A DNA stretch of 64,000 nt from NCBI RefSeq assembly GCF_902652985.1, contig NC_047027.1, forward strand, positions 37,138,001 through 37,202,000, written 5' to 3'. Source of the stretch: Pecten maximus. Its lineage: Eukaryota. Position 1 is the stretch's first letter. Every line of letters starts with the position of its first letter. The notes beneath the pieces were generated by a model. That model made no database searches. It had not been told where the DNA came from and saw nothing but the letters and a program-made list of their open reading frames with translations. This document shows positions 23,801 through 59,809 of this stretch, in pieces. Position numbers and translations under genes: made by a program.

Positions 23801-26800
23801 TTATTGAGAAGAAGTTGTTTAAAGATTTTAGCCTTTTTGACCCCTGTGACCTTGAATGAAGGTCAAGGTCATTCATTTGAACAAACTTGGTAGCCCTTCA
23901 CCCCAGCATGCTACAGACCCAATATCAAGTCCCTGGGTCTTTTGGCTATTTAGAAGAAGTCGTCTAATTTTTTTTTAGCATATTTGACTCCTGTGACCTT
24001 GAATGAAAGTCAAGGTCATTCATTTGAACAAACTTGGTAGCCCTTTACCCCAGCATGCTACAGACCCAATATCAACTCCCTGGGACTCTTGGTTATTGAG
24101 AAGAAGTTGTTTAAAGATTTTAGCCTTTTTGACCCCTGTGACCTTGAATGAAGGTCAACGTTATTCATTTGAACAAACTTGGTAGCCCTTCACCCCAGCA
24201 TGCTACAGGCCCAATATTAGGTCTCTAGGCCTTTTGGTTATTGAGAAGAAGTTGCTTGAATGGAAAGTTGACGCCGGACGGCCGGACGGACGACGGACGA
24301 CGGACGCCGCGCCACGGCATAAGCTCACTTGCCCTTCGGGCAGGTGAGCTAAAAACTGGTCAGCTGCTTTACTTCAAAGCCTATGAGTGTATGCCTTATA
24401 ATAGACATAGGAAGAGACTGGAGGGTGCAATGGGATTTCATAAAAGTAGTGAAATTAGAAATTATTTTTTCAGGATTTCAATATTGTTGTTAGACCCTGA
24501 TAAGCCAAATTTGAACAACTGGGCCCTGTTGCTCAACACAGAATAACCGTGGTTAAAAGAATCCTTTACCTGTAAAAATGACCCTACCAGACTTTGTATA
24601 CTTTTTGTACCTGAGTAGATCCTAACCCTACCAGACTTTGTATAATTTTGTACCTGAGTAGATCCTAACCCTACCAGACGTTGTATAATTTTGTACCTGA
24701 GTAGATCCTAACCCTACCAGACTTTCTATACTTTTTGTACCTGAGTAGATCCTAACCCTACCACAGACTTTCTATACTTTTTGTACCTGAGTAGATCCTA
24801 ACACTACCAGACTTTCTATACTTTTGTACCTGAGTAGATCCTGACCCTACCAGACTTTCTATACTTTTGTACCTGAGTAGATCCTAACCCTACCAGACTT
24901 TCTATACTTTTGTACCTGAGTAGATCCTAACCCTACCAGACTTTCTATACTTTTGTACCTGAGTAGATCCTAACACTACCAGACTTTCTATACTTTTTGT
25001 ACCTGAGTAGATCCTAACCCTACCACAGACTTTGTATAATTTTGTACCTGAGTAGATCCTAACCCTACCACAGACTTTTTATACTTTTTGTACCTGAGTA
25101 GATCCTAACCCTACCACAGACTTTGTATACTTTTGTACCTGAGTAGATCCTAACCCTACCACAGAGTTTCTATACTTTTTGTACCTGAGTAGATCATAAC
25201 CCTACCACAGACTTTGTATACTTTTGTACCTGAGTAGATCCTAACCCTACCACAGACTTTGTATACTTTTGTACTTGAGTAGATCCTAACCCTACCAGAC
25301 TTTCTATACTTTTGTACCTGAGTAGATCCTAACCCTACCACAGACTTTCTATACTTTTTGTACCTGAGTAGATCCTAACCCTACCAGACTTTCTATACTT
25401 TTTGTACCTGAGTAGATCCTAACCCTACCAGACTTTCTATACTTTTTGTACCTGAGTAGATCCTAACCCTACCAGACTTTCTATACTTTTTGTACCCGAG
25501 TAGATCCTAACCCTACCACAGACTTTGTATACTTTTGTACCTGAGTAGATCCTAACCCGACCAGACTTTCTATACTTTTTGTACCTGAGTAGATCCTAAC
25601 CCTAACAGACTTTCTATACTTTTTGTACCCGAGTAGATCCTAACCCTACCAGACTTTCTATACTTTTGTACTTGAGTAGATCCTAACCCTAACAGACTTT
25701 CTATACTTTTGTACCTGAGTAGATCCTAACCCTACCACAGACTTTGTATAATTTTTGTACCTGAGTAGATCCTAACCCTACCAGACTTTCTATACTTTTT
25801 GTACCTGAGTAGATCCTAACCCTACCAGACTTTCTATACTTTTTGTACCTGAGTAGATCCTAACCCTACCAGACTTTCTATACTTTTTGTACCTGAGTAG
25901 ATCCTAACCCTACCAGACTTTCTATACTTTTGTACCTGAGTAGATCCTAACCCTAACACAGACTTTCTATACTTTTTGTACCCGAGTAGATCCTCACCCT
26001 AACACAGACTTTCTATACTTTTTGTACCTGAGTAGATCCTCACCCTACCACACTTTCTATACTTTTGTACCTGAGTAGATCCTAACCCTACCACAGACTT
26101 TCTATACTTTTTGTACCTGAGTAGATCCTAACCCTACCACAGACTTTGTATACTTTTGTACCTGAGTAGATCCTAACCCTACCAGACTTTGTATAATTTT
26201 GTACCTGAGTAGATCCTAACCCTACCAGACTTTCTATACTTTTTGTACCTGAGTAGATCCTAACCCTACCACAGACTTTCTATACTTTTTGTACCTGAGT
26301 AGATCCTAACCCTACCAGACTTTCTATACTTTTTGTACCTGAGTAGATCCTAACCCTACCAGACTTTCTATACTTTTTGTACCTGAGTAGATCCTAACCC
26401 TACCACAGACTTTCTATACTTTTTGTACCTGAGTAGATCCTAACCCTACCAGACTTTCTATACTTTTGTACCGGAGTAGATCCTAACCCTACCAGACTTT
26501 CTATACTTTTTGTACCTGAGTAGATCCTAACCCTACCAGACTTTCTATACTTTTTGTACCTGAGTAGATCCTAACCCTACCAGACTTTCTATACTTTTGT
26601 ACCTGAGTAGATCCTAACCCTAACACAGACTTTCTATACTTTTTGTACCCGAGTAGATCCTCACCCTAACACAGACTTTCTATACTTTTTGTACCTGAGT
26701 AGATCCTCACCCTACCACACTTTCTATACTTTTGTACCTGAGTAGATCCTAACCCTACCACAGACTTTCTATACTTTTTGTACCTGAGTAGATCCTAACC

Positions 26801-29800
26801 CTACCACAGACTTTGTATACTTTTGTACCTGAGTAGATCCTAACCCTACCAGACTTTGTATAATTTTGTACCTGAGTAGATCCTAACCCTACCAGACTTT
26901 CTATACTTTTTGTACCTGAGTAGATCCTAACCCTACCACAGACTTTCTATACTTTTTGTACCTGAGTAGATCCTAACCCTACCAGACTTTCTATACTTTT
27001 TGTACCTGAGTAGATCCTAACCCTACCAGACTTTCTATACTTTTTGTACCTGAGTAGATCCTAACCCTACCACAGACTTTCTATACTTTTTGTACCTGAG
27101 TAGATCCTAACCCTACCAGACTTTCTATACTTTTGTACCGGAGTAGATCCTAACCCTACCAGACTTTCTATACTTTTTGTACCTGAGTAGATCCTAACCC
27201 TACCACAGACTTTCTATACTTTTGTACCCGAGTAGATCCTAACCCTACCAGACTTTCTATACTTTTTGTACCTAAGTAGATCCTGACCCTACCACAGACT
27301 TTCTATACTTTTTGTACCTGAGTAGATCCTAACCCTACCAGACTTTCTATACTTTTGTACCTGAGTAGATCCTAACACTACCAGACTTTCTATACTTTTT
27401 GTACCTGAGTAGATCCTAACCCTACCACAGACTTTCTATACTTTTTGTACCTGAGTAGATCCTGTATAGAGATTCCTCAAAGTCGCGCGAGATTCGACCA
27501 CAGTCAAGCCCCGGTAATGACATTGCTAATAACGATTCTGCACTTTTGGCACCACGTAGACGTCGCCGCTTCCAGTTGTGAACATCTTCCTCTGTGATGG
27601 CTTTCCTATCTTCACTCAGACCAAGTGGCTCTGGAATGATGTCATATTAATGGTAAATAAAATGTTTAATGTATTGAGTTATAATATTAATGGTCATTAA
27701 AGTGTGTTGAATGGTAATATTATTGGTCAATAAAGTGTATAATGTATTGAATGGTAATATTGACTGGCGCCTTTCTATTTATCTGTCACCCAGATTGCAT
27801 TTATATTGACAATAAATACAATCTGACAAGCGTTTAATTGTTGATTATAAAGTTTTCTGCACTTAACGAGTTAACTATTATGACTGTCATGCATACATGT
27901 ATTATCACAGTTCAGAAATAGCTAGAGAGTCATCTGTTGTAACACACTTGCACTAAATGCAGTATTTGTATATTAAACATGTAGACATACCAACTGATCA
28001 AGGCACAAATCTATTATAATCTGTGTATGTACTAATATTTTACCAAGTTTATGAGACAAATTATTTCAATTATGGACAAAAGTAGTCATTGACGTCACAT
28101 TTCCATTTAAAAGTTACTTACCACCTATGCTGTTTTTACGTCCCTTCTGTTTGATGCTGCCCTGCCGTGGCCCACGAGAGAAGATTGAGCGCCAACCACT
28201 CGGTGATTTCTTTGACTTGCCATAGCCTACAGTGTTACTTCCACTGACCAGCGTTTTCTTTCTGTATAGGATAAAACAGAGCCTGAAATCATGTTAGGTA
28301 CAGCATGTGGGCTTTGTCCCTCACAATGTACATAGCTGGGGTGAGAGTTCGGTTTATTTTGTTTGGTTTGTTTAACGTCCTACTAACAGCCATGGTCATT
28401 TAAGGACGTGGCAGGTTTTGGAGATGGAGGAAAGCCTGAGTACCCGGAGAAAAACCACCGGCATACAGTCAGTACCTGGCGACTGCCCCACATAGGTTTC
28501 GAACTCGCAACCCAGAGGTGGAGGGCTAGTGATAAAGTGTCGGTACACCTTAACCACTCGGCCACCACGGCCCCTGCTTGAGTGAGAGGTTGTTGGGATA
28601 ATGCAATTTAGTGGTTGGTGGTTAAATGGCATGGTAATAACATAATAGCCTTACATCTGTATAATGTTGTGTACATCATGTTGGCTTTTGTCCCCCACAA
28701 TGTACATAGCTGGGGTGAGAGGCAGTTGGGATAATTCTGTTTAGTGGTTGGTGGTCAAGTGGTGTAGATGTAACACACTTGACTTTCATCAGGGAGCACT
28801 TTCATCTGGGTCAACTAGACCGATTAAAATATCGAGGATATTGAATGATTTCAAGTTGCATATAACATACATTTCAACAGTATGACAGAATATCGATATA
28901 ACATACATTTCAAGAGTATGACAGAATATCGATATATTCTTTCATCACAATTTAGGCATTTTCTACTGTTATCTGCAGAGAATCTGTGCATGAATAGCTA
29001 ACTTCAAGTGAGTATTTTGTCAAACCTAGTCTGCATATTTCAGAAATACAGCAAAATGGCCCATCTATCTCTCAAAACTTTATTTTCAATGTAAAACTTA
29101 TATTTTCACTGCAAAATCTTATAAAATTCTCTCATCGCTGCAGTGAAGATATAAGTTTGATAAGTTTGATAAGTTTGCTAAATTTCACAGGCAAAAATGC
29201 AATAAAAGGTGATGTAACTGATTTCCCAATTGTTGTAAAACACATAAGGTTTGATATCCATTGTAGTGGCTGGATAGTGGGATAATCAAGTTAGTGGTGG
29301 TTTGATAGTTGGATTAGTGGGTTTTCTAGATTCAACAACAGTTTAGCCATTAAGTGTAGCCATTCTTAATCCAGTCATCAATCGCCTTATGCAGCTTCTA
29401 TTCTAGGTTTATACTTTTCAGATAGAACAACCCTATGCTCCAATGTAGAGGTAACTCTGATATATGAACCCAGTCAACTTGGTAAGCTTTTTTAGGTTAT
29501 TTCCCTTGAAGATATTCAATTTAAAACCTTCCTAAATCTTTCAAACTTGCATTCTGCTAATGTCTTTATATTACCAAGCTTGTAAATTGTACTGCCAGAA
29601 TCTTTATGTCAAATATTTTTTACAGAAGACCCTGAAATATACCTTTCTTATTCAGAAACGGGTTATTTTAGTGCCAAGATTTACTCTTATTTGAATAATG
29701 ATGGTATGCAAGTACCTATAGCCTGGCAAATCTATGACGGTATGGTAGCGAGATGGAAGGCGTTCTGGTCCCCCTCCGACATCTATATACTTCTGTGGCG

Positions 29801-32800
29801 GTGGGCGTAGACTAGCGGACAGGGCACGCTCCCTTGCCTCCTCCAGTGTAATTAGTTTAGTCGGTGTAGATATTGCTAGTGACTTTGGACGAGGTTTCCT
29901 CTGGGCACCTACAACACAATGGCATCAGTTTAAGACAAAGACAAAAAACAAACTTTTACATGAGGGAGTACTAAGAACATTTTACACACTTTTATACAAG
30001 GTACAACAATGTACATGTACTTGGTTCAAATTATTTGTTTTTCATATCTGTCGGGACTGGAATCGATCAATGTCAGAAATCTGGCTCTCCAAATATGCGA
30101 AAATAATGAACTCATTCCTGGGTTGCTATTCAAATAGTTATTGTAGAAACAACCAGATCTGATTCTTTTATGTTGCACATGGATCGGAATTTTTTTTGCA
30201 CAAGCTGTGTAATTCAACAAGATTAACAAAGTCTTGTCTAGCTTTCCTCTGTAATTTACAGTTGATATAATATTTGATGAATCAGCTAAATATCTGTGTT
30301 TAAACTCTTCAGATGCTAAATAAATCCCTAAATCTAGGTTTTAATGATGTAATCAGTAATCTTGATATTTTTCATTTCCAGCCAAAAATGATCCTTCTAT
30401 ATGCTGTACCAAAGGTATACTCACTTTTGAGTTCGGGTGATGAGTAAGATGGCATCTTATCACTGAAGATAAGATCAGCATAGAGTATCAGACACTCTGT
30501 GACCACAGCTTGTATCCCCACCCCCTGGAGAGCTGCAGCTCCACCCCCAGTCTCCAGCTCTTTCGACCGGAGAAGATTTGGTGCCCACACAATGGCCAGG
30601 TTCTTGGAATGCATACCGGTGTCAGGGCCATAGGCAGCCACTTTGGCTAGATGTCGCATGAGGTATTCTAAAGTTCTGGAAAATGAAATGTGTATACAAA
30701 TACAGTGAAAAATTTTCCAAACTGACATTCAATAGGATGGGAAATGCTGTGTAATCTGACATCAAGTGTCATTAAAACCTGTCTAATATGAAACCTTGAT
30801 AGATTGTAAGAGAAACCCTCCAATTAGACACCCTTTTGGATCTGTATTATATACTATTGTATGGGATCTGAATTGAATCCTATCTGAAACAAATTTAGCA
30901 GATCTGTACTTTCTAATGAGGGGGAAGCAACCTGTCCTACCTGTAATGAGGGGGAGGTAACTCATAATACTAATGAGGGGGGATAACTCATCATACCTGT
31001 AATGAGGGGGAGGTAACTCATAATACTAATGAGGGGGGATAACTCATCATACCTGTAATGAGGGGGAGGTAACTGCTGCACAACATCGTGAATCTTCCAC
31101 AGTTTATTGTCTTCATCTCGCACTGCATCCTGTCAACAATTCAAATAGATATCCGTGGATATATTTATAAGTCCAAATCACACAATTTAAAAATTCAAAA
31201 AGAAGCAATTGTAGAAGATATCCTATTAGGCTTTTACTTATGGGAACAGTTGTTTAAACTATCTTACATCAAAGAATTTTTCTGATTCAAAAATGAAAAG
31301 ATATGGCAACCCTATTTTGGGATGTGTGTCTCCTAATATGCAAATCAAATCATTCTGTAAGACAATCATACATACAGCAAATTTGTTGTAAAGTTGATAG
31401 GTAAGGAGAGGGTTGGGAAGCTCACGGAAGTACATCTTAAGTAAGGAGCTGATACTGTGGATGTCCTGTAGATAAACGTCGGTCGTCAGATCTGGAACGC
31501 GGTCTTCATCGAAGGCCAATCTAACCACAATAAAGAATTGTAACCAACATTGGCCGAACAACAACAAATATAATCCAAAATCTGGAAATATAGTACACAA
31601 CAAAGGTCGTCCATGTGTTGACGATATAATATTGGGACCGATATCTATCAGGGGTATATGCTATAAGTTCGAGATTTTGTGTGTACATGTACAACAAGGG
31701 CAGATAACTCATACACGTAACGCAAGGTAAATATCCCTATAGATTTGCACAGGGCTGTATTGCTTTTATTTCATTTCTCTTTTTATTTACAACTCTCTAA
31801 ATATCATATTAAGCAAGATATTAAAACCTACAAAGAAGGGAGATTACTCCTGTGACAACTGAAGATACCAGGTTACTGGCTGAACTCACCGGAGTTTCTG
31901 TATATTGGAGGTGATCCCTGACAGCCTGTAGATGCCATCCACAATGCCATGTTCCTCTATTACTTCTGAACAACACTTTAACACCAGGGGTACTGTAACA
32001 GAATATCACAGCGATTCTATGGATCTCTATACAGTAAAACATGTTTAGTATGAACACGTTTATAGCGATTTTATAGATATTGCGAACTGATCCCGATTCC
32101 CCAGCTATTCTCCCTCTTACTTCTATGTAATTCTGTAATTATATTGCGAATTTCACATAGCAAAATATTGTCTATAACGAACCAATTTAGCGGTCCCGTC
32201 GGCTGAAGTACGGCTATTCAATCGGTGAGTTATATTTTCGATGACTTCTGAATAAAGTGAGTTGTTTTGTCGATGTTTATGTCAAGTTGTTAATCCATTC
32301 TTCGAAGTCTAATTAGTGTGTACACAGTACAATGGCTTTATCATCAAGCGATTGAGAGCTAGTGAAAACGAGACTTCCGGGGTAAAGGTCACTGCGACCG
32401 ATTTTGTCAGTATTGATGCAGATGTTGTAAAAGACATTAAGAACGTGTTGGACAGTGAAGACGAGGAGAAAATAGAGACAGGGGACTAACAATCCGTAAT
32501 CAGTGGCGCTACGGCGAGTGATTATTTACACGAGATAAGCCATTTTCTGGAGTCCCAAAATGATATGTCAGATGTTTTTAGTACTTTGTACACACTTGCC
32601 TCACACAAAAAGTTTCGGCAGAAAATTATAACGGACTTAAAATAATTGAATCGCTTTTAATTTCTACTTGCTTGTAATTTTATTTTAATATTTTCATACA
32701 GCGAAGTTTTTAGGAAAAAACAATAAAATTTGTAATACACGTAATACGAACTATCAATATAACGAACTGATTCAGTTGGTCCCCTGGGATTCGTTATAAC

Positions 32801-35800: not shown

Positions 35801-38800
35801 CCTCCCCCTCCCCTGTCAGCCTCCTCCCCCTCCCTTTGTCAGCCTCCTCTCCCTCCCTTTGTCAGCCTCCTCCCCTTCCTTTTGTCAGCCTCCTCCCCCT
35901 CCCTTTGTCAGCCTCCTCCCCCTCCCTTTGTCAGCCTCCTCCCCCTCCCTTTGTCAGCCTCCTCCCCCTCCCTTTGTCAGCCTCCTCCCCCTTCCTTTTG
36001 TCAGCCTCCTTCCCCTTCCTTTTGTCAGCCTCCTCCCCCTCCCCTGTCAGCCTCCTCACCCTCACTTTCTCAGCCTCCTCCCCCTTCCTTTTGTCAGCCT
36101 CCTCCCCCTTCCTTTTGTCAGCCTCCTTCCCCTCCCCTGTCACCCTCCACACCCTCCCCGGTCAGCCTATTCCCCCTCCTCTCTGTCAGTCTCCACACCC
36201 TCCCCGGTCAGCCTATTCCCCCTCCTCTCTGTCAGTCTCCTCCCCCTCCCTTTGTTAGCCTCCTCCCCCTCCCTCTGTCAGCCTCATCCCCACCCCCCTG
36301 TCAGCCTCCTCACCCTCCCCTGTCAGCCTCCTTTTTTATAATAGTGTTTGACTGTGAGTGTTAGATACACACACATGCACTTACATGGTTTCTTACTTGC
36401 GTTAGGATCTGGTATTCGACTCTCAACTGATGCAGGAACTTTGTCTCCGATCACCTCCACGCACTCGCTCGGGAAAAACCCAACCTGTATTGAAAATAAA
36501 ACAATACTGTGGAAAACTGGAAACAAAAGAAAATTAACAAACGTCTAATTACAAGTCCTAATTTTTACATGTGAAAATCAACATGTTTCTTCCCTTACTA
36601 CCGAGTAATTTTTCATGATTTTTCTGACAATATTGCTATATTTATACATTGAAATGCTGACAATCCAACCTTATTTAGTCCTAAGTAATGTCCTACATGT
36701 GACAGACATGAGCAAACGGAACTTTTCTTTACATAGATCAATATTAAAGCTGATGAATGGTCCATCAATATCCACCTGCTGATGATAGTAACATCATAAA
36801 AGGAAAATAAGAATTTCACTTTTTTCAAATGTTTCATTGTTAGGGCTGTTCCTGGAAAACATATGGGACAGGGGGGAGGCATTTTGAAATTAGGGGACCT
36901 ACCTATAGGAGCGATTTAAAATTTTGATGAGCCTCCCACATATTTGTTTTTTTGTAAACATAGAAGCAATTTTAATGTAAAAATGGTACAAACACATCAC
37001 GTACACCCAACAACAGAAGAAATTTATTTCAAACACCACCAACCTATAGATGTGATTTTAATTTGAATTTTAATTTATAAAAGTGCCTTTCCATCCCCCC
37101 TCCTCTTTTCCTGGAACTGCCCTTAGCATTTCATTTCCTTTTCATGTCCTTTGCCAAGAATTCTTTTCACTTTGTAATAATGATAATAATTAGTCCTAAG
37201 ACATATTACCACTTTATATTTGAAAATTAAATTGACATAAATTTCTCAACTCTTCTCCAATGTTACCTCAAAACCTCTCTTGCCTCGCCACCAAATCGTC
37301 TCCTCCTGTTGGGGCATATCTATCACAGATACAATGTCTCCGACCTGTAAGAAACAGAGCAGCAAACCATTGTTCACGATTAACAGTAGATCTACAGAAA
37401 ATATTTAAACAGACACTTTCATTTTCCATCTACAAGTCAATATATTAAGGTTCTTTATTTTTTTTTTTTTTTTGTTAAATAGAAGAAAATTCAATAAATA
37501 TTTTGCTGTAAAAATATTTTTTATTGTTGATATTAAAACAGCTTTCTGTTCGCATCTTAGCTTGATTTTTAAGATAAAGTCAGAAATTTTATGAGATCAA
37601 GCTTACAGTTCTTGGATCAAATAAATCTTTCGAGGGCTATACCATGAATTCAGCAACAAACATGATAGCCGTTGTTATTTTAAGCCTATTGTATAAACGT
37701 TAATATTACGTTGTTATTTTCAGCCTATTGTATAAAATGTCATTACTTCTAGAGATATTTCGTCTGGGGCCTGGGCCGTATAGCGTTTGATTGCGTGAGC
37801 AGCAGCTATTGCGGGTGTGTTGATCCCTGAGTCATCCGTCGCCAGCAAGCGGTTGCCTCGATTGTCCAGCTGGAAAGAGATATAACACATCTGGAAAATG
37901 TCTAAATGACAATTAATCTCTAGCTTCTATGCAAAATAGAATTAACGATTGACAAAGGTACGGTATCTATGAGTTGTTAAAGTGACCTTGACCTTAACAC
38001 TGTAGTGTACTGGAGTTAAAACAGTAATGAACTGGAGTTAACACAGTAATGAACTGGAGTTAACACAGTAATGAACTGGAGTTAACACAGTAATGAACTG
38101 GAGTTAACACTGTAATGTACTGGAGTTAACACTGTAGTGTACTGGAGTTAACACAGTAATGAACTGGAGTTAACACCGCAGTATACTGAAGTTAACACTG
38201 TAATGAACTGGAGTTAACACAGGAATGAACTGGAGTTAACACAGTAATGAACTGGAGTTAACACTGTAATATACTGGAGTTAACTCTGTAGTGCACTTGA
38301 TCATGATAGTAACTGTGTTAACTCTAGTGTACTACTGTGTTAACTCCAATTCACCAGTGTTAACTTCAATACACTGCGGTGTTAACTCCAGTTCATTACT
38401 GTGTTAACTTCAGTTCATTACTGTGTTAACTCCAGTTCATTACAGTGTTAACTTCAGTATACTGCGGTGTTAACTTCAGTTCATTACTGTGTTAACTTCA
38501 GTTCATTACCGTGTTAACTGCAGTACACAACAGAGTGAACGCCTTGTATGATTTATAATATGAGACAGACAGACCTGCTACATTCAAGGAAACAAACTTA
38601 CTACAAAGCCTTATTGTAGATTTCATTTTAGTTCTGAGTCATGTTCAAATGTTCATGATCAAACTCACTTCAAACAAGTTGAATACCGAGCCACAATCAG
38701 ACTCACCTCAAAACAGCTGAGTACCGAGCCACAGTCAATCAAACTCACCTCAAACCAGTTGAGTACCGAGCCACAGTCAATCAAACTCACCTCAAACCAG

Positions 38801-41800
38801 TTGAGTACTGAGCCACAATCAAACTCGCCTCAAACCAGTTGAGTACCGAGCCACAATCAATCAAACTCACCTCAAACCAGTTGAGTACCGAGCCACAATC
38901 AAACTCGCCTCAAACCAGTTGAGTACCGAGCCACAATCAAACTCACCTCAAACCAGTTGAGTACCGAGCCACAGTCAATCAAACTCACCTCAAACCAGTT
39001 GAGTACCGAGCCAGTCAATCAAACTCACCTCAAACCAGTTGAGTACCGAGCCACAATCAAACTCACCTCAAACCAGTTGAGTACCGAGCCACAGTTAATC
39101 AAACTCACCTCAAACCAGTTTAGTACCGAGCCACAATCAAACTCGCCTCAAACCAGTTGAGTACCGAGCCACAGTCAAACTCGCCTCAAACCAGTTGAGT
39201 ACCGAGCCACAGTCAATCAAACTCACCTCAAACAAGTTGAGTACCGAGCCACAATCAAACTCACCTCAAACCAGTTGAGTACCGAGCCACAATCAAACTC
39301 ACCTCAAACCAGTTGAGTACCGAGCCACAGTTAATCAAACTCACCTCAAACGAGTTGAGTACCGAGCCACAGTTAATCAAACTCACCTCAAACCAGTTGA
39401 GTACTGAGCCAGTCAATCAAACTCACCTCAAACCAGTTGAGTACCGAGCCAGTCAATCAAACTCACCTCAAACCAGTTGAGTACCGAGCCAGTCAATCAA
39501 ACTCACCTCAAACCAGTTGAGTACCGAGCCACAGTCAATCAAACTCACCTCAAACGAGTTGAGTACCGAGCCACAGTTAATCAAACTCACCTCAAACCAG
39601 TTGAGTACTGAGCCAGTCAATCAAACTCACCTCAAACCAGTTGAGTACTGAGCCACAATCAAACTCACCTCAAACCAGCTGAGTACCGAGCCACAGTCAA
39701 TCAAACTCACCTCAAACCAGTTGAGTACCGAGCCAGTCAATCAAACTCACCTCAAACCAGTTGAGTACCGAGCCACAGTCAATCAAACTCACCTCAAACC
39801 AGTTGAGTACCGAGCCACAGTTAATCAAACTCACCTCAAACCAGCTGAGTACCGAGCCACAGTCAATCAAACTCACCTCAAACCAGTTGAGTACCGAGCC
39901 ACAGTTAATCATGCTGCCAGCGATGCGAGAAAATCTCTGTAAATATTGGGACAACATCTCCTCCATCTCCTGCAACACAAAAGGAATCAGGTCCAAGGGG
40001 TCACCACAGTTTAAACAATAGAGGTCAGAGGTCAACGCTTAGTGATAAGAAGTCAGCAGACACAGTTTAAGGTTAAAAGGCGAGGGATTTTTTTTACTTT
40101 TTCTTCTACATTTATGACATATCTTCAAAATTGGATCCACAAGCCACAATACTCAATTTTCTTACACTCTTTTCGTGTTAAGAAAGAAATCTTCAACGTT
40201 TTCAGACTAAAACTGGGCTTCATTATGACCTAGTTTTAGATATTATGATATTGACATTGTTAAATGGATAACAGATGAAGGGTACTGAGCTACTGGAGAG
40301 AGAACTGGGTTACTAGGTAGGGTGTTGGAGAATATTATGGGCTATTAATTTGATAATGTACTCTGTCATAAGGGTATTGAGTTATTAGGAAGAATAGTGG
40401 ATGACATTATTAGATGGAATCTCCCATACAGAGATATTTGGTTACGGACCTTATATGTTTTATTAGTGTCCTCTTCTTGGTTGAGATTTGGGAGACGACT
40501 GAACTTCCTGTCATAGATACAGCGGTGTAACTGTCTGTCCAGCATCTTAAAGTTTTTAAATGTTCTCCGTATAGTCCAGGACTTATCATTGGCCAGAGTC
40601 TTGACGAGAAATGTTCGTTCCATAACATCTGTTTCTCCATGGTGATGGTTCTCCTGGTCCTCGTCACACAGCGACACCTGGTGGACCGATTATCAACATA
40701 TTTCAGAAAAGTGATAATTTCCTCACTGATCTTTTTCCTTAATTCCAAATTGAACAAGTTGATATTCTCAAGTAAAAGAAAAAGACTTCAGCTTTGAACT
40801 AACATGTATGAGAATCAGCTTTGAACTAACATGTATGAGAATCAGATTTGAACTAACATGTATGAGAATCAGATTTGAACTACAGGGATCACCATGGCTT
40901 CAGATTTTACTATGGAGGAACCTGCGGGGACATTTTCCCAGCGCGCCGCAAGACCAATATTAATTAATTAAAGGGAGATAATTTGTTTACATGAGTTATG
41001 TCCCTTTTCATTTTTAGGGAGATGATTTATTGTACAGTAGTTATATCCCCTTAGAAATTGTTTTCAGAAATAATGATAAACTATTTTAATCATGGTAATA
41101 TAATTTATTTATTCAATATGTAAGAAAAATAAATACAGCATTTACCAATGTCTGACTCATCCATATTTGTACATCCTTAAATTAATACACTGCTCGTTCT
41201 TCATTCTCTTTACCAACTCAGACTTTCTCAAACTCATGGTCTCTCTCTATCTCTCTTTAAGATTACCAATTAAATGTTACTGATACACTTCCAAAGCTCA
41301 AGTTTCTTAAAATAATAAGCATTATGATATCACACTAAACACAATAACGATATGTAATGTCACAGCACTAATATAATATGATTTCCAATGTCACAATTGT
41401 CAGTCATTTTCACACACAAATTGTCCATTTTCTTACAGCCCAACTTCACACTTCATTGTCCTCAGGATCAAACAATGTGGCGATGGTGATATTTCTTTTT
41501 CTGATCTGTGTCCATAGATCTGCTGTCCTGTTTACAAAACATGCCTACAAATCAAATGAAACATTCAAAGTTAATAAAAATAATTTAATGAAATGTTTAA
41601 ACATGAAACTTTCACTCTAGGTAAATACTTGGACCTAATCACTGAAAATATTGAAAAAGAATTAATTTTAATTTTTGGTTTTGTGATTAGACAAAGTCAG
41701 TATATATTTAGTCACTAATGTGAAATTTGGAAATAATACATTTTTTTATCAAATATCAACTATTAAGTTTGCTTACATTAAATATGTATAGGCCTATAAA

Positions 41801-44800
41801 TCAGTCATATACAAACTAGCCAATAACATTTTTAAAAAATAATTTAAAAATTATATTTTTTATTATGACATGTAAGAGATTTATATTATACAAAATACAT
41901 TTTAGTAACCATTTGACACCTAAATAACCTACCTTCATCTTCGTGGTACTTTAGCCATAAATATTTCTTCATTCAGTCGGTAAAAATGACGATCTGTGTT
42001 TTGACTTGAACAAGTCCGGTGAACAGACCGGGCTATGCCTTCTGTCGTTTCGGCGAATTCTCGAAAAATGATTCAATAGACTGCTGCTTTAGTTGTCGCT
42101 TCATGATTACATCATGAAATTATAATCATCGGTCTTTTTGTTCTACAGTTCATGTTACTTTCGTTTTGCAAACTCCTCATTTCTTCACAAACATCCATGT
42201 CACGTGTGTTATAAAGTAATCGGGGTCATATATGCGTTTGACTTTAATTGTCGAAGCCATTTAAGCCTTTATTCGACACAGATCGACCGCTGTCAAAACA
42301 CAAACACGCGGTTCGTGGCCTGATCAATTAAGCCATCAATTAATATTGGTATGATTGATATCGGTTAATTCGTCGGGGTATTGGACGTCCAGGTCATTGA
42401 ATGAAGTGTCAAAAGTCGCCCTAGCGTGTGAACAGGTAATTAACCGGCCTCAAGCTCTTACCTGTGCAGTCAGTAAAACACTACACAGTCGGCGGTATCT
42501 GGGGCTCACCACGGGTTAACAGAGTTTTGAATACGAAGATCGGCGGGGCAGATTTTTTTTACTATGGCGCTACATGATTTTACTATGGCGGGTAGACATT
42601 TTACTATGGCGCTGCTCCATAGTAAAACAGCCCGTGGTGATCACTGAACTAACATGTATTTGAATCAGATTTGAACTAACATGTATGAGAATCAGCTTTG
42701 AACTAACATGTATGAGAATCAGCTTTGAACTAAAATGTATGAGAATCAGTTTTGAACTAACATGTACGAGAATCAGCTTTGAACTAACATGTATGAGAAT
42801 CAGCTTTGAACTAACATGTATGAGAATCAGATTTGAACTAACATGTATGAGAATCAGCTTTGAACTAACATGTATGAGAATCAGCTTTGAACTAACATGT
42901 ATGAGAATCAGCTTTGAACTAACATGTATGAGAATCAGATTTGAACTAACATGTATGAGAATCAGATTTGAACTAACATGTATGAGAATCAGCTTTGAAC
43001 TAACATGTATGAGAATCAGATTTGAACTAACATGTATGAGAATCAGATTTGAACTAACATGTATGAGAATCAGCTTTGAACTAACATGTATGAGAATCAG
43101 ATTTGAACTAACATGTATGAGAATCAGATTTGAACTAACATGTATGAGAATCAGCTTTGAACTAACATGTATGAGAATCAGCTTTGAACTAACATGTATG
43201 AGAATCAGATTTGAACTAACATGTTTTTTTTTTGTTTTGTTTTTTTTACAAAATCTGCCATTTCTGAAATGGTACTCATATTAATTGACTTGTTTTCTAA
43301 ATTTCTGAAATTTTAAACTGGACGTCATAGACTCATTAGTGTTTTCCGTGCCTATATCACAAAGAGTGCAAAACGAACGTGTTCCCAATGTATTTTAGAC
43401 TTATTTTCCTCATCAAGGGATTAAAAATTACCAATTGTGTCCATAAATCTAGAAGTGACATGTACACTACATCATTAAACTGGTATTAAGCATGATATTC
43501 ATGAAACAATTATCAGCTTGCAAATTTTAAACATAATTAACATTTTCCTAATTCAGTCGTTTGGATTTCCCCAAAATACCTAGGAAAACCATGGCATAAC
43601 ACTGCCTTATCAATGACAACTTATTACCTGTATTTTATGGAGTTCCACAAAGTCATAGTGGAAGTGAGCACATTCTTGCAGCTTGGGAAAACGTGTCGAG
43701 CCATCTAGCATGCTGTAACAGAATCATTTATAGAGTATAGATATAGGAATAACAGTCCACAAAGACAATTTCTAACACAATATATAAGATATACATTTAA
43801 AAAAAAAAAATTTATGAAATATATTTCAGTGATTACAATGTTAACCATCATGGTTATTAGCATGCAAATAATAATGGCTACAGAAAATTAATATTTGTTG
43901 ATCGTCAGGTGTAAAGTTATGAAAAACTAAACTGTTATCAATTTGTAACAAGGTCTAAAGTCTGAAGTTCCATGCCGACATTCTGTAAAATCTCACTAAA
44001 GACTTCACAACGAACATCTATTTACAAGCTACCTGTTATTGAAGACTTCACAACAAAGATTTATTGACAAGCTACCTGTTATTGAAGACTTCACAACAAA
44101 GATTTATTGACAAGCTACCTGTTATTGAAGACTTCACAACAAAGATTTATTGACAAGCTACCTGTTATTGAAGACTTCACAATGAACATTTATTTACCAG
44201 CTACCACACTACAACAACTGAACACATACAGGTAAAGCTGAGGTGCTCAGTTAAGTGGTTGTGAGGTAAGCTGAGGTGCTAAGTTAAGTGGTTGTTAAGT
44301 GGTTGTGAGGCGTACCTCGACACACGTCGGATGCGGATAGTTGAGGTGGAGGCTGTACTGCTTCGCTGAGAACCGAGGCTGCTGTTATCAGAATCGTACA
44401 TCTGTAACACTCCACCATGCTGCTGTAACAGATATCAGTGATTGGTTACAATTTACATCAGACAATGCCAAACATATTTTTCTGTCATATTCACGCCAGA
44501 TTTTCGTAATAGTCATGTAATGATATTTCAGGATTTAACCAATTTCAAACAATAAATAAAACAATTCCCAAAACAATCTTGTTATTTTGTATCTTAAATA
44601 AAAGATATAAGAAAGACATTTCATTTCTAAATCATGGCTTTTCTGTAGAGAAATATCCCCATTGTAGTTACCTTGGTATAATACTGGGTACCTGTCCCCT
44701 CTGACCGTATGGTGGCTGTACTAGACTTTCTGTAGAGAAATATCCCCATTATAGTTACCTTGGTATAATACTGGGTACCTGTCCCCTCTGACCGTATGGT

Positions 44801-45897
44801 GGCTGTACTAGACTTTCTGTAGAGAAATATCCCCATTATAGTTACCTTGGTATAATACTGGGTACATGTCCCCTCTGACCGTATGGTGGCTGTACTAGAC
44901 TTTCTGTAGAGAAATATCCCCATTATAGTTACCTTGGTATAATACTGGGTACCCGTCCACTCTGACCGTATGGTGGCTGTACTAGACTTTCTGTAGAGAA
45001 ATATCCCCATTATAGTTACCTTGGTATAATACTGGGTACATGTCCCCTCTGACCGTATGGTGGCTGTACTAGACTTTCTGTAGAGAAATATCCCCATTAT
45101 AGTTACCTTGGTATAATACTGGGTACCCGTCCCCACTGACCGTATGGTGGCTGTACTAGACTTTCTGTAGAGAAATATCCCCATTATAGTTACCTTGGTA
45201 TAATACTGGGTACCCGTCCCCTCTGACCGTATGGTGGCTGTACTAGACTTTCTGTAGAGAAATATCCCCATTATAGTTACCTTGGTATAATACTGGGTAC
45301 CCGTCCCCACTGACCGTATGGTGGCTGTACTAGACTTTCTGTAGAGAAATATCCCCATTATAGTTACCTTGGTATAATACTGGGTACCTGTCCCCTCTGA
45401 CCGTATGGTGGCTGTACTAGACTTTCTGTAGAGAAATATCCCCATTATAGTTACCTTGGTATAATACTGGGTACATGTCCCCTCTGACCGTATGGTGGCT
45501 GTACTAGACTTTCTGTAGAGAAATATCCCCATTATAGTTACCTTGGTATAATACTGGGTACCCGTCCACTCTGACCGTATGGTGGCTGTACTAGACTTTC
45601 TGTAGAGAAATATCCCCATTATAGTTACCTTGGTATAATACTGGGTACCTGTCCCACTCTGACCGTATGGTGGCTGTACTAGACTTTCTGTAGAGAAATA
45701 TCCCCATTATAGTTACCTTGGTATAATACTGGGTACCCGTCCCGTCTGACCGTATGGTGGCTGTACTAGACTTTCTGTAGAGAAATATCCCCATTATAGT
45801 TACCTTGGTATAATACTGGGTACCTGTGCCCTCTGACCGTATGGTGGCTGTACTAGACTTTCTGTAGGGTTCATCTTCTTCGTCTACCCTTACATTT
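15443..45897 (-). CDS. ARHGAP32: Rho GTPase-activating protein 32/33-like (PX-RICS/CdGAPr family), spliced CDS of 18 exons, ~2,580 aa plus an alternative N-terminus
   Basis: Manual exon chain with GT-AG borders and matching phases throughout. Family motifs: FPKLQECAHFHY, NCGSVLNWFELDNRGN, SH3 (AHAIKRYTAQAPDEISLEVGDIVSVID..WWRGKRGFEVGFFPSECVE), VFGCDLGEHL, DGIYRLSG, KMYFRELPNPLLTYQLY, NLAIVWAPNLLRS, KLITLEEAR. Confidence 0.92.
20995..21499. mobile_element. MITE with 4x tandem amplification (~60 bp) of its left end
   Basis: gctgttccaggaaa ... tttcctggaacagccctaa; related inverted copy at 36840-37124. Confidence 0.65.
21800..22269. mobile_element. MITE
   Basis: TIR gtggttcgtacaga ... tctgtacgaaccac; subterminal ttcaagca(c)tttt repeats. 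Confidence 0.65.
22292..22453 (-). CDS. ARHGAP32: ARHGAP32-like exon (DDESKHPSIRHKRSLSS...SGTSS)
   Basis: tttacag| ... G|gtaggt, 162 nt, phase 1-1, open frame. Confidence 0.8.
23101..24355. mobile_element. Helentron-type non-autonomous element (HINE/CvA-like) carrying ~7 x 145-bp internal repeats
   Basis: Start ttaacaag-gggcccaatgggccc-gctcacctg; 145-bp tandem units; (ggac)n microsatellite; terminal hairpin agctcacttgccc-ttc-gggcaggtgagct followed by aaaaa. Confidence 0.8.
24581..27463 (-). repeat. 43-46-bp tandem array (~65 copies) spanning the exon/intron junction at 27451
   Basis: Unit gtacaaaaagtatagaaagtctg(tg)gtagggttAGGATCTACTCAG. Confidence 0.95.
27451..27630 (-). CDS. ARHGAP32: ARHGAP32-like exon (EPLGLSEDRK...RLRGAKSAESL...LYRIYS)
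   Basis: cattccag| ... CAG|gtacaa, 180 nt, phase 1-1; LRxAKSxESL family motif. Confidence 0.85.
28122..28261 (-). CDS. ARHGAP32: ARHGAP32-like exon (KKTLVSGS...KKSPSGWRSIFS...NSIG)
   Basis: tatacag| ... G|gtaagt, 140 nt, phase 2-1; KKSP.GWRS.F family motif. Confidence 0.88.
28350..28574 (-). mobile_element. tRNA-derived SINE (intronic)
   Basis: Full-length copy of the same family. Confidence 0.9.
29716..29908 (-). CDS. ARHGAP32: ARHGAP32-like exon (AQRKPRPKSLAISTPTKLITLEEARER...YHTVIDLPGY)
   Basis: gttgtag| ... AG|gtactt, 193 nt, phase 1-2; RPKSL / LEEA / YIDVGGGP / YHTVIDLP motifs. Confidence 0.9.
30425..30675 (-). CDS. ARHGAP32: ARHGAP32-like exon, RhoGAP C-terminal part (TLEYLMRHL...NLAIVWAPNLLRS...)
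   Basis: ttttccag| ... A|gtgagt, 251 nt, phase 2-1. Confidence 0.93.
30912..31075 (-). repeat. 56-bp tandem repeat (3 copies) spanning the exon/intron junction at 31053
   Basis: GTTACCTCCCCCTCATTACAG|gta ends at 31053, 30997 and 30941. Confidence 0.9.
31053..31129 (-). CDS. ARHGAP32: ARHGAP32-like exon, RhoGAP (DAVRDEDNKLWKIHDVVQQLPPPHYR)
   Basis: ttgacag| ... CAG|gtatga, 77 nt, phase 0-2; HDV.QQLPPPHYR motif. Confidence 0.92.
31376..31520 (-). CDS. ARHGAP32: ARHGAP32-like exon, RhoGAP (LAFDEDRVPDL...KMYFRELPNPLLTYQLYNKFA)
   Basis: ggttag| ... GCT|gtatgt, 145 nt, phase 2-0. Confidence 0.93.
31890..31992 (-). CDS. ARHGAP32: ARHGAP32-like exon, RhoGAP with catalytic arginine finger (VPLVLKCCSEVIEEHGIVDGIYRLSGITSNIQKLR)
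   Basis: gttacag| ... CG|gtgagt, 103 nt, phase 1-2; GIYRLSG intact. Confidence 0.93.
32032..32812 (+). mobile_element. pogo/Tigger-type (Tc1/mariner) non-autonomous DNA transposon
   Basis: TA|CAGTAAAACATGTTTA ... TATAACCGTGTTTTACTG|TA; internal degenerate DFVSIDADVVKDIKNVLDSEDEE ... RQKIITD, like Tigger C-termini. Confidence 0.75.
33180..33610. repeat. 18-bp minisatellite
   Basis: (acaaataagcccctgtcc)n. Confidence 0.95.
33690..33851 (-). CDS. ARHGAP32: ARHGAP32-like exon (VRKHGKFLSFLR...KERVFGCDLGEHLLNTGQENTTD)
   Basis: atggtag| ... G|gtgagt, 162 nt, phase 1-1. Confidence 0.9.
34468..35510. repeat. ~33-36-bp minisatellite
   Basis: (aaacagttatacac(ac)atgtgttatgtaggtgggt)n. Confidence 0.95.
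35655..36332. repeat. C-rich ~21-25-bp minisatellite
   Basis: (tgtcagcctcctccccctccc)n with variants. Confidence 0.95.
36385..36484 (-). CDS. ARHGAP32: ARHGAP32-like exon, SH3 end (VGFFPSECVEVIGDKVP...KKP)
   Basis: atacag| ... T|gtaagt, 100 nt, phase 0-1. Confidence 0.92.
36840..37124. mobile_element. MITE related to 21190-21499, opposite orientation
   Basis: ttagggctgttcctggaaaa ... ttttcctggaactgccctta; shared internal segments. Confidence 0.65.
37267..37344 (-). CDS. ARHGAP32: ARHGAP32-like exon, SH3 (VGDIVSVIDMPQQEETIWWRGKRGFE)
   Basis: cttacag| ... GAG|gtaaca, 78 nt, phase 0-0. Confidence 0.93.
37747..37869 (-). CDS. ARHGAP32: ARHGAP32-like exon (LDNRGNRLLATDDSGINTPAIAAAHAIKRYTAQAPDEISLE)
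   Basis: ctttccag| ... GAA|gtaatg, 123 nt, phase 0-0. Confidence 0.93.
37995..38530. repeat. 22-bp minisatellite arranged as two inverted arms
   Basis: (gttaacacagtaatgaactgga)n to ~38295, then its reverse complement from ~38312. Confidence 0.9.
38655..39910 (-). repeat. 38-42-bp tandem array (~30 copies) spanning the exon/intron junction at 39877
   Basis: Unit gtgagtttgattgactgtggctcggtactcaactggtttgag. Confidence 0.95.
39877..39969 (-). CDS. ARHGAP32: ARHGAP32-like exon, PX-like end (EMEEMLSQYLQRFSRIAGSMINCGSVLNWFE)
   Basis: gttgcag| ... GAG|gtgagt, 93 nt, phase 0-0. Confidence 0.9.
40450..40677 (-). CDS. ARHGAP32: ARHGAP32-like exon, PX-like (VSLCDED...KSWTIRRTFKNFKMLDRQLHRCIYDRKFSRL...TYK)
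   Basis: ccaccag| ... AAG|gtccgt, 228 nt, phase 0-0. Confidence 0.9.
40787..43223. repeat. 27-bp satellite split by the hAT-like element
   Basis: gagaatcag(c/a)tttgaactaacatgtat at 40787-40882 and 42647-43223. Confidence 0.95.
40883..42646 (-). mobile_element. internally deleted hAT-like DNA transposon inserted in a 27-bp satellite
   Basis: Imperfect TIRs CAG(G/T)GATCACCA(T/C)GG..TTTTACTATGGAG; aacta duplicated at 40878-40882 and 42647-42651; remnants MKRQLKQQSIESFF, KKYLWLKYHEDE|GMFCK (TTF-type zinc finger-like). Confidence 0.75.
43628..43712 (-). CDS. ARHGAP32: ARHGAP32-like exon (MLDGSTRFPKLQECAHFHYDFVELHKIQ)
   Basis: gttacag| ... CAG|gtaata, 85 nt, phase 2-0; FPKL.ECAHFHY family motif. 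Confidence 0.92.
43998..44205. repeat. 43-bp tandem repeat (~4.5 copies)
   Basis: gaagacttcacaacaaagatttattgacaagctacctgttatt. Confidence 0.9.
44316..44422 (-). CDS. ARHGAP32: ARHGAP32-like exon (QHGGVLQMYDSDNSSLGSQRSSTASTSTIRIRRVS)
   Basis: gttacag|CAG (NAGNAG acceptor) ... AG|gtacgc, 107 nt, phase 0-2, fits both neighbours. Confidence 0.8.
44630..45866 (-). repeat. 87-bp tandem array (14 copies) spanning the exon/intron junction at 45804
   Basis: Unit gtaactataatggggatatttctctacag + AAAGTCTAGTACAGCCACCATACGGTCAGAGGGGACAGGTACCCAGTATTATACCAAG; donors at 45804, 45717, 45629, 45542 ... 44672. Confidence 0.95.
45804..45897 (-). CDS. ARHGAP32: ARHGAP32-like first common exon (NVRVDEEDEPYRKSSTATIRSEGTGTQYYTK)
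   Basis: ttaacag| ... AAG|gtaact, 94 nt, phase 2-0, in frame with the next exon. Confidence 0.75.
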
Positions 45898-46909: not shown

Positions 46910-47000
46910 TTAACCCTTTCACCCCTACTGACCATAATGGACTTCAACTTATGAAAGAATGGCAGATTCCACTAAAGTTTCTTAGGGTTGAAAGGGTTAA
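46910..47000. mobile_element. piggyBac-like mini-MITE (83 bp between TTAA sites)
   Basis: TTAA|CCCTTTCACCCCTA ... TAGGGTTGAAAGGG|TTAA. Confidence 0.6.
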
Positions 47001-49142: not shown

Positions 49143-49243
49143 CTCAGGTCAATCAAGGTCATCCTCCTTGGCCGGATACATGGCCTCTTTCTGGGAATCT
49201 GCGGCGTGCCATAGATATTCTGTACCTCAAAGGATTCCATCAT
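49143..49243 (-). CDS. candidate alternative first coding exon (MMESFEVQNIYGTPQIPRKRPCIRPRRMTLIDL)
   Basis: ATG at 49243, open frame to AG|gtaacc in phase 2, matching the 45897 acceptor; GC-richer island. Confidence 0.55.
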
Positions 49244-49898: not shown

Positions 49899-50109
49899 TA
49901 CTGTAAACGTACTTATTTTAGCGCAATCAAATTTTAGCGCATTTGCAGATTTCAGCCAGTTAGCGCAATGATGAATTAGCGCATCCACAGAACTTTCTAT
50001 AGAAATGGAACGTACAAAAAGTAATTAGCCCTATCATAATTTAGCGCAAGGCTTCCAGCGCGAAAAGCGCTAAAATAAAATTACCGCTAAAATATGTACG
50101 TTTACAGTA
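49899..50109. mobile_element. MITE with TA ends
   Basis: tactgtaaacgtacttattttagcg ... cgctaaaatatgtacgtttacagta. Confidence 0.8.
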
Positions 50110-59762: not shown

Positions 59763-59809
59763 CTTGACCGTCTCCGTGTCCACAGTGACAGCAGCCCTGC
59801 CCAGATCAT
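59763..59809 (-). CDS. candidate alternative first coding exon (MIWAGLLSLWTRRRS)
   Basis: acaagATG ... AAG|gtatgt, 47 nt, phase 2. Confidence 0.4.

What the first reader, a model, noticed from the sequence alone, without database searches (positions are those of the whole stretch)
44630..45897. 87-bp array forms a ready-made mutually exclusive exon cluster
Seen: each unit is a 29-nt gt...ag spacer (gtaactataatggggatatttctctacag) followed by a 58-nt cassette ending CAAG|gt. The cassette starts in phase 2 and ends in phase 0, exactly like the parent 94-nt exon, so any one copy could replace it in frame with KSSTATIRS(E/V/D)(G/W)T(G/C)TQYYTK. About five peptide variants exist among the 13 extra copies, and one copy (~45655) has a +1 indel. 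Established: 29 nt is below normal metazoan minimum intron size, so adjacent cassettes could not be joined, which is the steric mechanism of mutually exclusive splicing. The acceptor arose from a ctacagaaa microhomology shared by the exon (CCCTACAGAAAG) and the original intron (ctctacagaaaag, ~44640). Inference: a Dscam-like exon cluster caught at birth.
Basis: partly seen in the sequence, partly recalled or inferred. Interest (0 to 1): 0.88.

Follow-up and report, generated by a model that had tools for sequence, protein, structure and literature searches.

The report
Splice-junction minisatellite in scallop RhoGAP gene
A king-scallop gene carries 13 extra tandem copies of the end of one exon plus the start of its intron. 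Each copy looks like a usable mini-exon, but the RNA available shows normal splicing, so it is most likely a young, tolerated repeat of a known kind and not a working set of alternative exons.

Summary
The DNA observation is correct in every detail. An 87-bp unit (29-nt gt...ag spacer plus 58-nt cassette) is repeated 14.1 times at 44640-45867 on the minus strand. It has 13 extra cassettes in the same phase as the parent exon, five peptide variants, one +1 indel and a 9-nt microhomology at the array borders.

The gene is Pecten maximus LOC117341471, an ARHGAP32-like PX-SH3-RhoGAP gene. The parent is its exon 2, which encodes a motif that hardly varies across bivalves.

RNA evidence does not show a working exon cluster:
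- Spliced contigs from two runs of two studies join the parent donor (45804) directly to exon 3 (44422).
- No contig joins a first exon to a cassette acceptor.
- One third run joins exon 3 to 51 nt carrying a cassette-type G. That is either a synonymous allele of the parent exon or real cassette use, and it is unresolved.

Three more minisatellites in the same gene also start inside an exon end and copy its donor. This is the known "mirage" or F7-IVS7 type of repeat, where the first donor is used. The scan has already found this type many times on other DNA of this genome.

Oddities that remain are a 10-nt variation hot spot and RefSeq isoforms X1/X2, which translate the array.

The parts
45804..45897 (-). 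Parent exon 2 (94 nt) of LOC117341471. It encodes NVRVDEEDEPYRKSSTATIRSEGTGTQYYTK.
   Evidence: Exact mapping of RefSeq isoform X4 (P0049) onto the window. Spliced RNA contigs of runs X2 and X14 cover 45804-45899. The peptide is conserved in bivalve orthologues.
44640..45867 (-). The 87-bp minisatellite, 14.1 units. Unit 0 is the 3' 58 nt of exon 2 plus the first 29 nt of intron 2. Thirteen further cassettes follow.
   Evidence: TRF; units printed in register; the only locus of this repeat in the genome.
45717..45774 (-). Cassette 1 (SDGTGT variant). It lies 29 nt after the parent donor.
45629..45687 (-). Cassette 2, 59 nt because of a +1 letter in the variable core. It breaks the frame if the array is read through.
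   Evidence: The open frame from exon 2 ends at 45594, and a new one opens at 45706.
44672..44729 (-). Cassette 13, the last one. Its donor lies 249 nt from the exon 3 acceptor. RefSeq X1/X2 join this donor to exon 3.
44643..44671 (-). Last spacer, which is the start of the original intron. It is the only spacer with C instead of T at position 8. It ends in the pre-existing ctctacag.
45859..45867 (-). Exonic copy of the 9-nt microhomology CTACAGAAA (upstream array border).
   Evidence: Sequence.
44640..44648 (-). Intronic copy of the 9-nt microhomology CTACAGAAA (downstream array border).
   Evidence: Sequence.
45823..45832 (-). The 10-nt variable core (cassette positions 29-38), shown here in the parent. 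The same positions in every cassette hold 7 of the 8 variable columns of the array.
   Evidence: Clustering P about 2.5e-6 (all columns) or 1.4e-4 (substitutions only) by simulation.
44316..44422 (-). Exon 3 (107 nt), the acceptor used by the parent donor.
   Evidence: joint 44422->45804 in runs X2 and X14.
49145..49240 (-). Alternative first coding exon (MESFEVQ...), conserved in other scallops and in Haliotis.
59765..59809 (-). Alternative first coding exon (MIWAGLL...) of RefSeq isoform X3.
38658..39911 (-). Second junction minisatellite of the same gene: 42 bp x about 31. The unit is the last 35 nt of exon 6 plus its GTGAGT donor.
24581..27463 (-). Third junction minisatellite: 44 bp x 65. 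The unit is the last 13 nt of exon 17 plus its donor.
30914..31074 (-). Fourth junction repeat: 56 bp x 2.4. The unit is the last 22 nt of exon 13 plus its donor.

Best explanation
This is a young, single-locus 'mirage' minisatellite, meaning a tandem repeat whose first unit spans an exon-intron boundary. It sits in intron 2 of the Pecten maximus ARHGAP32-like gene.

Proposed origin (inferred): slippage or unequal exchange between two 9-nt direct repeats (CTACAGAAA) lying 87 nt apart, one in exon 2 and one 21 nt into the intron, duplicated the last 58 nt of the exon plus the first 29 nt of the intron. Further unequal exchanges expanded this to 14 units.

Because the intronic repeat copy happened to end in a pyrimidine-rich ...ctctacag, every extra unit looks like a 58-nt exon with both splice sites and the right phase.

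In the RNA that could be examined, the spliceosome uses the authentic acceptor (45897) and the first donor (45804), and removes all 13 cassettes as part of a 1381-nt intron (shown). The likely reasons are inferred. The first of several identical donors is chosen, as shown experimentally for human F7 IVS7. In addition, the only good branch-point-like motif of the spacer (gUAAc) overlaps the donor itself, so a spacer bound by U1 cannot also serve the next acceptor.

RefSeq isoforms X1/X2, which start at an ATG in a spacer and translate 11 units, are most likely artefacts of multi-mapping reads and pre-mRNA coverage.
For: G000 has 918,306,378 bases in 3983 contigs, the same figures as the published P. 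maximus assembly (PMC7191990).

Canonical joint 44422->45804: it appears in a 522-nt contig of run X2 and a 327-nt contig of run X14. X2 matches the parent exactly on 45804-45899; X14 shows one other letter there. Both continue at 45899 into the MATCT first exon. X2 and X3 are two 2020 runs of one study, and X2's laid exon pieces match the reference without a difference. That fits the two mantle RNA samples taken from the genome specimen, though this link is my inference.

Run X2 has no contig on the array. Run X1 has cassette-to-spacer contigs at depths 16 and 54 against 4-9 for single-copy intron. That is what pre-mRNA or DNA background multiplied by copy number would give.

Orthologues in Mizuhopecten, Argopecten, oysters and mussels have one copy of the peptide, and the SEGTGT motif is the same in nearly all bivalve sequences seen.

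Three more arrays of the same gene start inside exons 6, 13 and 17 and copy their donors, and the mapped mRNA uses the first donor each time. Arrays fill 41% of the 25-kb span.

Known precedents are amphioxus mirages, which do not disturb splicing (PMC3087553), and the human F7 IVS7 37-bp VNTR, where only the most upstream donor is used (PMC1557585).
Against: In run X1 a 1913-nt spliced contig (depth 29) joins exon 3 to 51 nt that carry G, the cassette letter, where the reference parent exon has C. No X1 contig was laid on the parent-specific 5' 36 nt. The tool warns that holes prove nothing.

The cassette acceptor is as good as real acceptors of this gene.

Variation is confined to 10 nt of the coding part and is mostly non-synonymous transversions. 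A purely neutral repeat does not predict that.

Only assembled contigs could be laid, not raw reads. Contigs drop rare isoforms, and nonsense-mediated decay would hide frame-shifted products.
Confidence: 0.75

Rival explanations
1. Nascent alternative-exon cluster. In some individuals or tissues a first exon is spliced directly to one cassette, and that cassette to exon 3. The protein would lack 12 N-terminal residues of exon 2 and could carry a variant of the SEGTGT motif. Neighbouring cassettes cannot be joined because the intron is only 29 nt. Multi-cassette products are frame-shifted (58 is not a multiple of 3) and removed by decay.
For: The splice signals and phase are credible. Run X1's spliced contig carries the cassette-type G next to exon 3, and nothing of X1 lies on the parent-specific part of exon 2. 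The variable core is mostly non-synonymous. Short intervening introns and frame-dependent decay are real ways of enforcing exclusivity in C. elegans (PMC4165533).
Against: No contig joins a first exon to a cassette acceptor. X2 and X14 are canonical. The G in X1 is synonymous, and X1 also differs synonymously in exon 3 (44372). Raw-read heterozygosity of the species is 1.71%, so an allele of the parent exon, or gene conversion from the array, explains it. The variants change a motif conserved in the bivalve orthologues seen. Non-adjacent cassettes are not sterically excluded. No selector-like RNA structure exists (z = +1.8). Three other arrays in the gene have no such reading.
Confidence: 0.12
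2. The array is retained in a real mRNA and translated as a 29-residue tandem repeat, as in RefSeq isoforms X1/X2 (XP_033759218, XP_033759219). These start at the ATG of a spacer after the indel unit and use the last cassette's donor.
For: The 87-nt unit has no stop in frame. The RefSeq models begin MGIFLYRKSST and run through 11 units into exon 3. Cassette-to-spacer contigs exist in run X1.
Against: Their depth in X1 (16 for a three-copy variant) is at intron level per copy, below the mRNA's 29. X2 has none. Read from exon 2, the +1 indel gives a stop at 45594. The spacer peptide is hydrophobic filler with no homologue, and orthologues lack it. Spliced reads with short overhangs map equally to all 14 donors, which invites this model.
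Confidence: 0.06
3. Assembly artefact: the array, its copy number or its variants were created by long-read assembly or polishing.
For: The assembly is PacBio CLR polished with Arrow and freebayes. The +1 letter lies in a G-rich stretch. No alternative haplotig exists for comparison.
Against: A run from another study (X1) holds cassette-to-spacer contigs. These include the exact SEGTCT variant and a variant not present in the reference. So the repeat and its variable core are real and polymorphic. Copy number and the indel remain unverified.
Confidence: 0.04

Closest known systems
Human F7 intron 7 37-bp VNTR (Borensztajn et al. 2006, PMC1557585)
   Same: It is a minisatellite whose first unit spans the exon-intron boundary, so the authentic donor is followed by identical pseudo-donors. 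These are functional in principle but normally silent, and the most upstream site is chosen.
   Different: The F7 units carry no acceptor-like site and are not frame-compatible mini-exons. The scallop unit is longer (87 bp) and includes 58 nt of coding sequence. Nothing has been tested experimentally here.
Amphioxus 'mirage' minisatellites (Adh3, globins; Ebner et al. 2010, PMC3087553)
   Same: They are tandem duplications of exon-intron boundaries, often with AG/GT signals in the units. Regular splicing is undisturbed, length is unstable between haplotypes, and units evolve in concert. That paper already proposes that a unit's exonic part could be recruited as a real exon.
   Different: The phylum differs. 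Here at least four such arrays sit in one gene, and earlier notes of this scan report them as unusually frequent at donors across this genome.
Mutually exclusive exon clusters born by tandem exon duplication (Dscam; C. elegans let-2 and egl-15, PMC4165533; PMC6071210)
   Same: Homologous tandem exon copies in the same phase. The intervening intron is below the minimum size, as in egl-15 (14 nt) and let-2 (30 nt). Exon length is not a multiple of 3, so double inclusion would be removed by decay.
   Different: No cassette has been shown in mRNA. The cassettes are truncated copies (58 of 94 nt). There are 13 nearly identical copies, not diverged ones, and no docking or selector structure. Steric blocking covers only neighbours. 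Orthologous proteins have one copy.

Membership tests
Mirage / splice-junction minisatellite | Head-to-tail tandem array inside an intron | tested here: met
   TRF: period 87, 14.1 copies, 97% matches.
Mirage / splice-junction minisatellite | First unit spans the authentic exon-intron boundary, so each unit repeats the exon end plus the 5' splice site | tested here: met
   Exon 2 ends at 45804 by exact protein mapping. The unit is 58 nt of exon plus 29 nt of intron.
Mirage / splice-junction minisatellite | Regular splicing uses the authentic (first) donor; repeated sites are silent | tested here: met
   Joint 44422->45804 in contigs of X2 and X14. X1 is ambiguous because of one cassette-type synonymous letter. 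Only contigs were available, no raw reads.
Mirage / splice-junction minisatellite | Instability or polymorphism between individuals | tested here: inconclusive
   Run X1 holds a variant unit absent from the reference array. Copy number in other individuals could not be measured.
Mutually exclusive exon cluster | Tandem homologous exons of matching phase with own splice sites | tested here: met
   Both lengths, 58 and 94 nt, leave remainder 1 on division by 3. The donor is identical, and the acceptor scores 8.4 bits, within the upper half of real acceptors. The cassettes lack 36 nt of the parent.
Mutually exclusive exon cluster | Each variant found in mature mRNA, exactly one per transcript | tested here: not met
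   No joint into a cassette acceptor, and no D, V, W or C variant joined to exon 3, in four runs. One run has a letter shared by the cassettes that may be an allele. Contigs can miss rare forms.
Mutually exclusive exon cluster | A mechanism that enforces exclusivity over the whole cluster (competing RNA structures, steric block, spliceosome incompatibility or decay) | tested here: inconclusive
   The steric block holds only for neighbours (29 nt, against a smallest intron of 246 nt in this gene). No structure is better than shuffles. A frame shift with a stop in exon 3 would allow decay (sequence).
Mutually exclusive exon cluster | Conservation of the cluster in related species | not testable with these tools
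Proteins of Mizuhopecten and Argopecten show a single copy, but their introns could not be read.

The most novel reading that the evidence does not exclude
The array is a proto-cluster already in partial use. In some animals or tissues, such as the one behind run X1, a first exon is spliced to a cassette instead of exon 2. The 10-nt hot spot then reflects either selection on, or targeted mutation of, the otherwise near-invariant SEGTGT motif. That would be a mutually exclusive exon cluster observed within a population at the moment of origin from a minisatellite.
Probability: 0.1. Interest if true: 0.8.

Novelty: new member of a known kind. Interest (0 to 1): 0.3.

Why it matters
If the cassettes are silent, this is one more well-documented case of a boundary-spanning minisatellite. 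It adds to the picture that the king-scallop genome makes such repeats unusually often at splice donors. It also flags two RefSeq protein isoforms (X1, X2) as probable artefacts.

Its extra value is as a natural test object. It offers fourteen identical donors and thirteen good acceptors spaced 29 and 58 nt apart in a conserved neuronal gene, which is a ready-made substrate for asking how splice sites are chosen in molluscs.

If even a few percent of transcripts use a cassette, it would show directly how tandem exon clusters can arise from minisatellite expansion.

Tried and rejected
- **Orthologous introns.** The array therefore could not be dated.
- **Transcript fragments.** I searched the protein collection with the exon 2 plus two-unit frame by reference to find scallop fragments that would show the 5' side of cassettes. 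It returned only three fragments from other bivalves.
- **Spliced models.** Exons were searched by reference, and a RefSeq protein was mapped back onto the window in a script.
- **Rfam.** Nothing found on 43000-50000.
- **Structure.** DNA and RNA folds of one and three units are no better than shuffles. A hairpin or quasi-palindrome explanation of the hot spot, and a docking/selector structure, are both unsupported.
- **Donor enrichment within this gene.** The test is only weak: 4 observed against 1.3 expected, P = 0.03.
- **Alternative haplotig.** None exists.

Full report
**What is there**

Tandem Repeats Finder reports one array at 44640-45867 with period 87, 14.1 copies, 97% matches and no indels at its resolution. 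Read on the minus strand and cut in register, unit 0 is the last 58 nt of a coding exon plus the first 29 nt of its intron. Thirteen further units follow. Each is a 29-nt spacer that begins gt and ends ag, followed by a 58-nt cassette ending CAAG before the next gt.

Cassette 2 (45687..45629) has one extra letter. The array borders are two copies of CTACAGAAA, at 45867..45859 in the exon and at 44648..44640 in the intron. This is the signature of a duplication by slippage or unequal exchange between short direct repeats 87 nt apart.

The last spacer (44671..44643) is the only one with C at its eighth position, as expected if it is the original intron start. The repeat exists at this one locus in the genome, and the unique flanks are single-copy.

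**The gene**

The genome is Pecten maximus. G000 has 918,306,378 bases in 3983 contigs, the exact figures of the published assembly (PMC7191990).

The minus strand of the window carries PX and RhoGAP exons and an open frame of 1823 codons (15446-20914), most of which is the last exon (20877..15446). That frame retrieves LOC117341471, whose orthologues are named ARHGAP32 in several bivalves.

Mapping RefSeq isoform X4 onto the window reproduces the protein exactly and gives 18 exons here. The parent is exon 2 (45897..45804, 94 nt), exon 3 is 44422..44316, and the introns are 246-4997 nt long.

Exon 2 encodes a peptide containing TIRSEGTGTQYY. It is almost unchanged in scallops, oysters, mussels and clams, and is still recognisable in abalone. 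Several alternative first exons feed into exon 2. Two of them lie in the window, at 49145-49240 and 59765-59809.

**Could the cassettes be exons?**

Formally yes.
- Both 94 and 58 leave remainder 1 on division by 3, so a first exon joined to any cassette joined to exon 3 stays in frame.
- The donor is the real one.
- The acceptor-like site scores 8.4 bits on a small matrix built from this gene's 18 real acceptors. Their leave-one-out scores run from -5 to 13 with a median near 7, and the site is in the top 3% of all AG sites of the gene.
- A 29-nt intron is far below anything in this gene and below the roughly 40-nt limit documented in C. elegans (PMC4165533).

Three points weaken the picture.
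- A cassette lacks the first 36 nt of exon 2, which are 12 strongly conserved residues.
- Steric blocking applies only to neighbours. Cassette i to cassette i+2 would be a 116-nt intron, so exclusivity over 14 units would have to rest on frame shift and decay. One extra cassette puts a stop in exon 3, as read.
- The only good branch-point-like motif in the spacer overlaps the donor. This is my inference from the sequence.

No stable or unusual DNA or RNA structure is predicted.

**RNA evidence**

Only assembled contigs were available, and whether the runs are RNA is a guess by the tool. The spliced contigs do show that RNA is present.

- **Run X2.** A 522-nt contig contains a first exon whose reverse complement reads ATG GCA ACA TGT ACA (that is, MATCT). 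It continues through exon 2 as an exact match including the parent-specific C, then exon 3, then the next exon.
- **Run X14**, from another study, shows the same 44422->45804 joint.
- **X2 and X3** are two 2020 runs of one study. X2's laid exon pieces match the reference without a difference, which fits the two mantle samples of the genome specimen described in the genome paper. That link is my inference.
- **Array coverage.** X2 has no contig on the array.
- **Cassette acceptors.** No run shows a joint or loose end at a cassette acceptor.

Run X1 is different. A 1913-nt contig (depth 29) joins exon 3 to 51 nt that were laid on a cassette (joint 44422->45368), because they carry G where the reference parent exon has C. 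Those 51 nt cannot say what lies upstream.

The same contig has a synonymous difference in exon 3 (44372). The species has 1.71% raw-read heterozygosity, and all 13 neighbouring cassettes carry G. A parent-exon allele, either ancestral or acquired by gene conversion, is therefore the simpler reading. No X1 contig was laid on the parent-specific part of exon 2. The tool states that holes prove nothing, but the point stays open.

X1 also holds cassette-to-spacer contigs. One matches the SEGTCT variant exactly (depth 16). One is a valine variant not present in the reference (depth 54). Single-copy intron depth in X1 is 4-9, so these depths are what pre-mRNA or DNA background times copy number gives. 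They do show that the array is real and variable in a second animal.

**The RefSeq isoforms**

Isoforms X1 and X2 (2869 and 2865 residues) begin MGIFLYRKSST at the ATG of the spacer after the indel unit. They read through eleven units and join the last cassette to exon 3. This works because the whole 87-nt unit is open in frame.

Spliced reads with short overhangs fit all 14 donors equally. The per-copy depth of unspliced units in X1 is at intron level, and X2 has none. I therefore regard these models as probable artefacts. X3 and X4 are the real forms.

**Context**

The window has 58 tandem-repeat rows, and arrays fill 41% of the 25 kb between exon 2 and the last exon.

Three further arrays of this same gene begin inside an exon end and copy its donor:
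- 42 bp x about 31 after exon 6
- 56 bp x 2.4 after exon 13
- 44 bp x 65 after exon 17

In each case the mapped mRNA uses the first donor. No array crosses an acceptor. Four observed against 1.3 expected under random placement gives P = 0.03, which is weak on its own.

Earlier notes of this scan report the same repeat type many times elsewhere in this genome, with an excess at donors. I did not test that genome-wide claim.

The type is known. [quoted passage not shown] They often contain AG/GT signals, do not disturb splicing and are unstable between haplotypes. They have even been proposed as a source of new exons and introns (PMC3087553). In the human F7 intron 7 VNTR, identical downstream donors are functional yet silent, because the most upstream one is selected (PMC1557585).

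**What remains unexplained**

Seven of the eight variable columns of the array lie in 10 nt of the cassette, and the other 77 positions are identical in all 14 units apart from the border spacer. Simulation gives P of about 2.5e-6 for all columns and 1.4e-4 for substitutions only. Most of the other arrays of the window vary at scattered positions; the 27-bp array is partly clustered.

Of the six substitution columns, four are transversions and four change the peptide. Two of the variants recur in run X1, so they are not assembly errors. I found no hairpin to explain this. From memory only, the G-rich core resembles the classical minisatellite core motif. That is a lead, not a test. Either a local mutation or conversion hot spot, or selection, could produce the pattern. 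I consider the first more likely because the RNA shows no use of the variants.

**Verdict**

- Observation: confirmed.
- Interpretation: partly supported. The architecture of a potential exon cluster is real, but the available RNA shows ordinary splicing.
- Classification: the structure belongs to a known class that this genome produces in quantity. It is a new member of a known kind, of moderate-to-low interest.
- Residual chance: about one in ten that a cassette is really used in some animals.

**Limits**

- Only contigs could be laid, not raw reads.

Noticed in passing
window 38658-39911, 30914-31074, 24581-27463 (minus strand): Three more minisatellites of the same gene start inside the 3' end of exons 6, 13 and 17 and repeat the donor about 31, 3 and 65 times. 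The mapped mRNA uses the first donor each time. No array crosses any of the 17 acceptors.
   Followed up: partly
window 45823-45832 and the same positions of every cassette: Variation in the 87-bp array is confined to a 10-nt G-rich core. Most changes are transversions and alter the peptide. Two variants also occur in an independent run. The cause is unknown.
   Followed up: partly
window 46910-47000: A 91-bp element with TTAACCCTTTCA...TGAAAGGGTTAA inverted ends, so a MITE-like element with a TTAA target. It gave at least 435 first-look candidates in the genome, of which the 40 scored are 94-100% identical. Its summed contig depth is 250-5300 in three of the four runs, with many different flanks.
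   Followed up: partly
RefSeq XP_033759218.1 / XP_033759219.1 (P0050, P0001): Isoforms X1 and X2 of LOC117341471 begin in a spacer of the array and translate eleven 29-residue units. This is probably an annotation artefact of multi-mapping reads.
   Followed up: partly
window 44588-44756, run X1: About 2000 depth-nt in this bin are not explained by the listed contigs. An unlisted contig at the array end or the start of the unique intron may be deeper than other single-copy intron pieces.
   Followed up: no
window 1-64000: There are 58 tandem-repeat rows in 64 kb. Arrays cover 41% of the 25-kb span between exon 2 and the last exon.
   Followed up: partly
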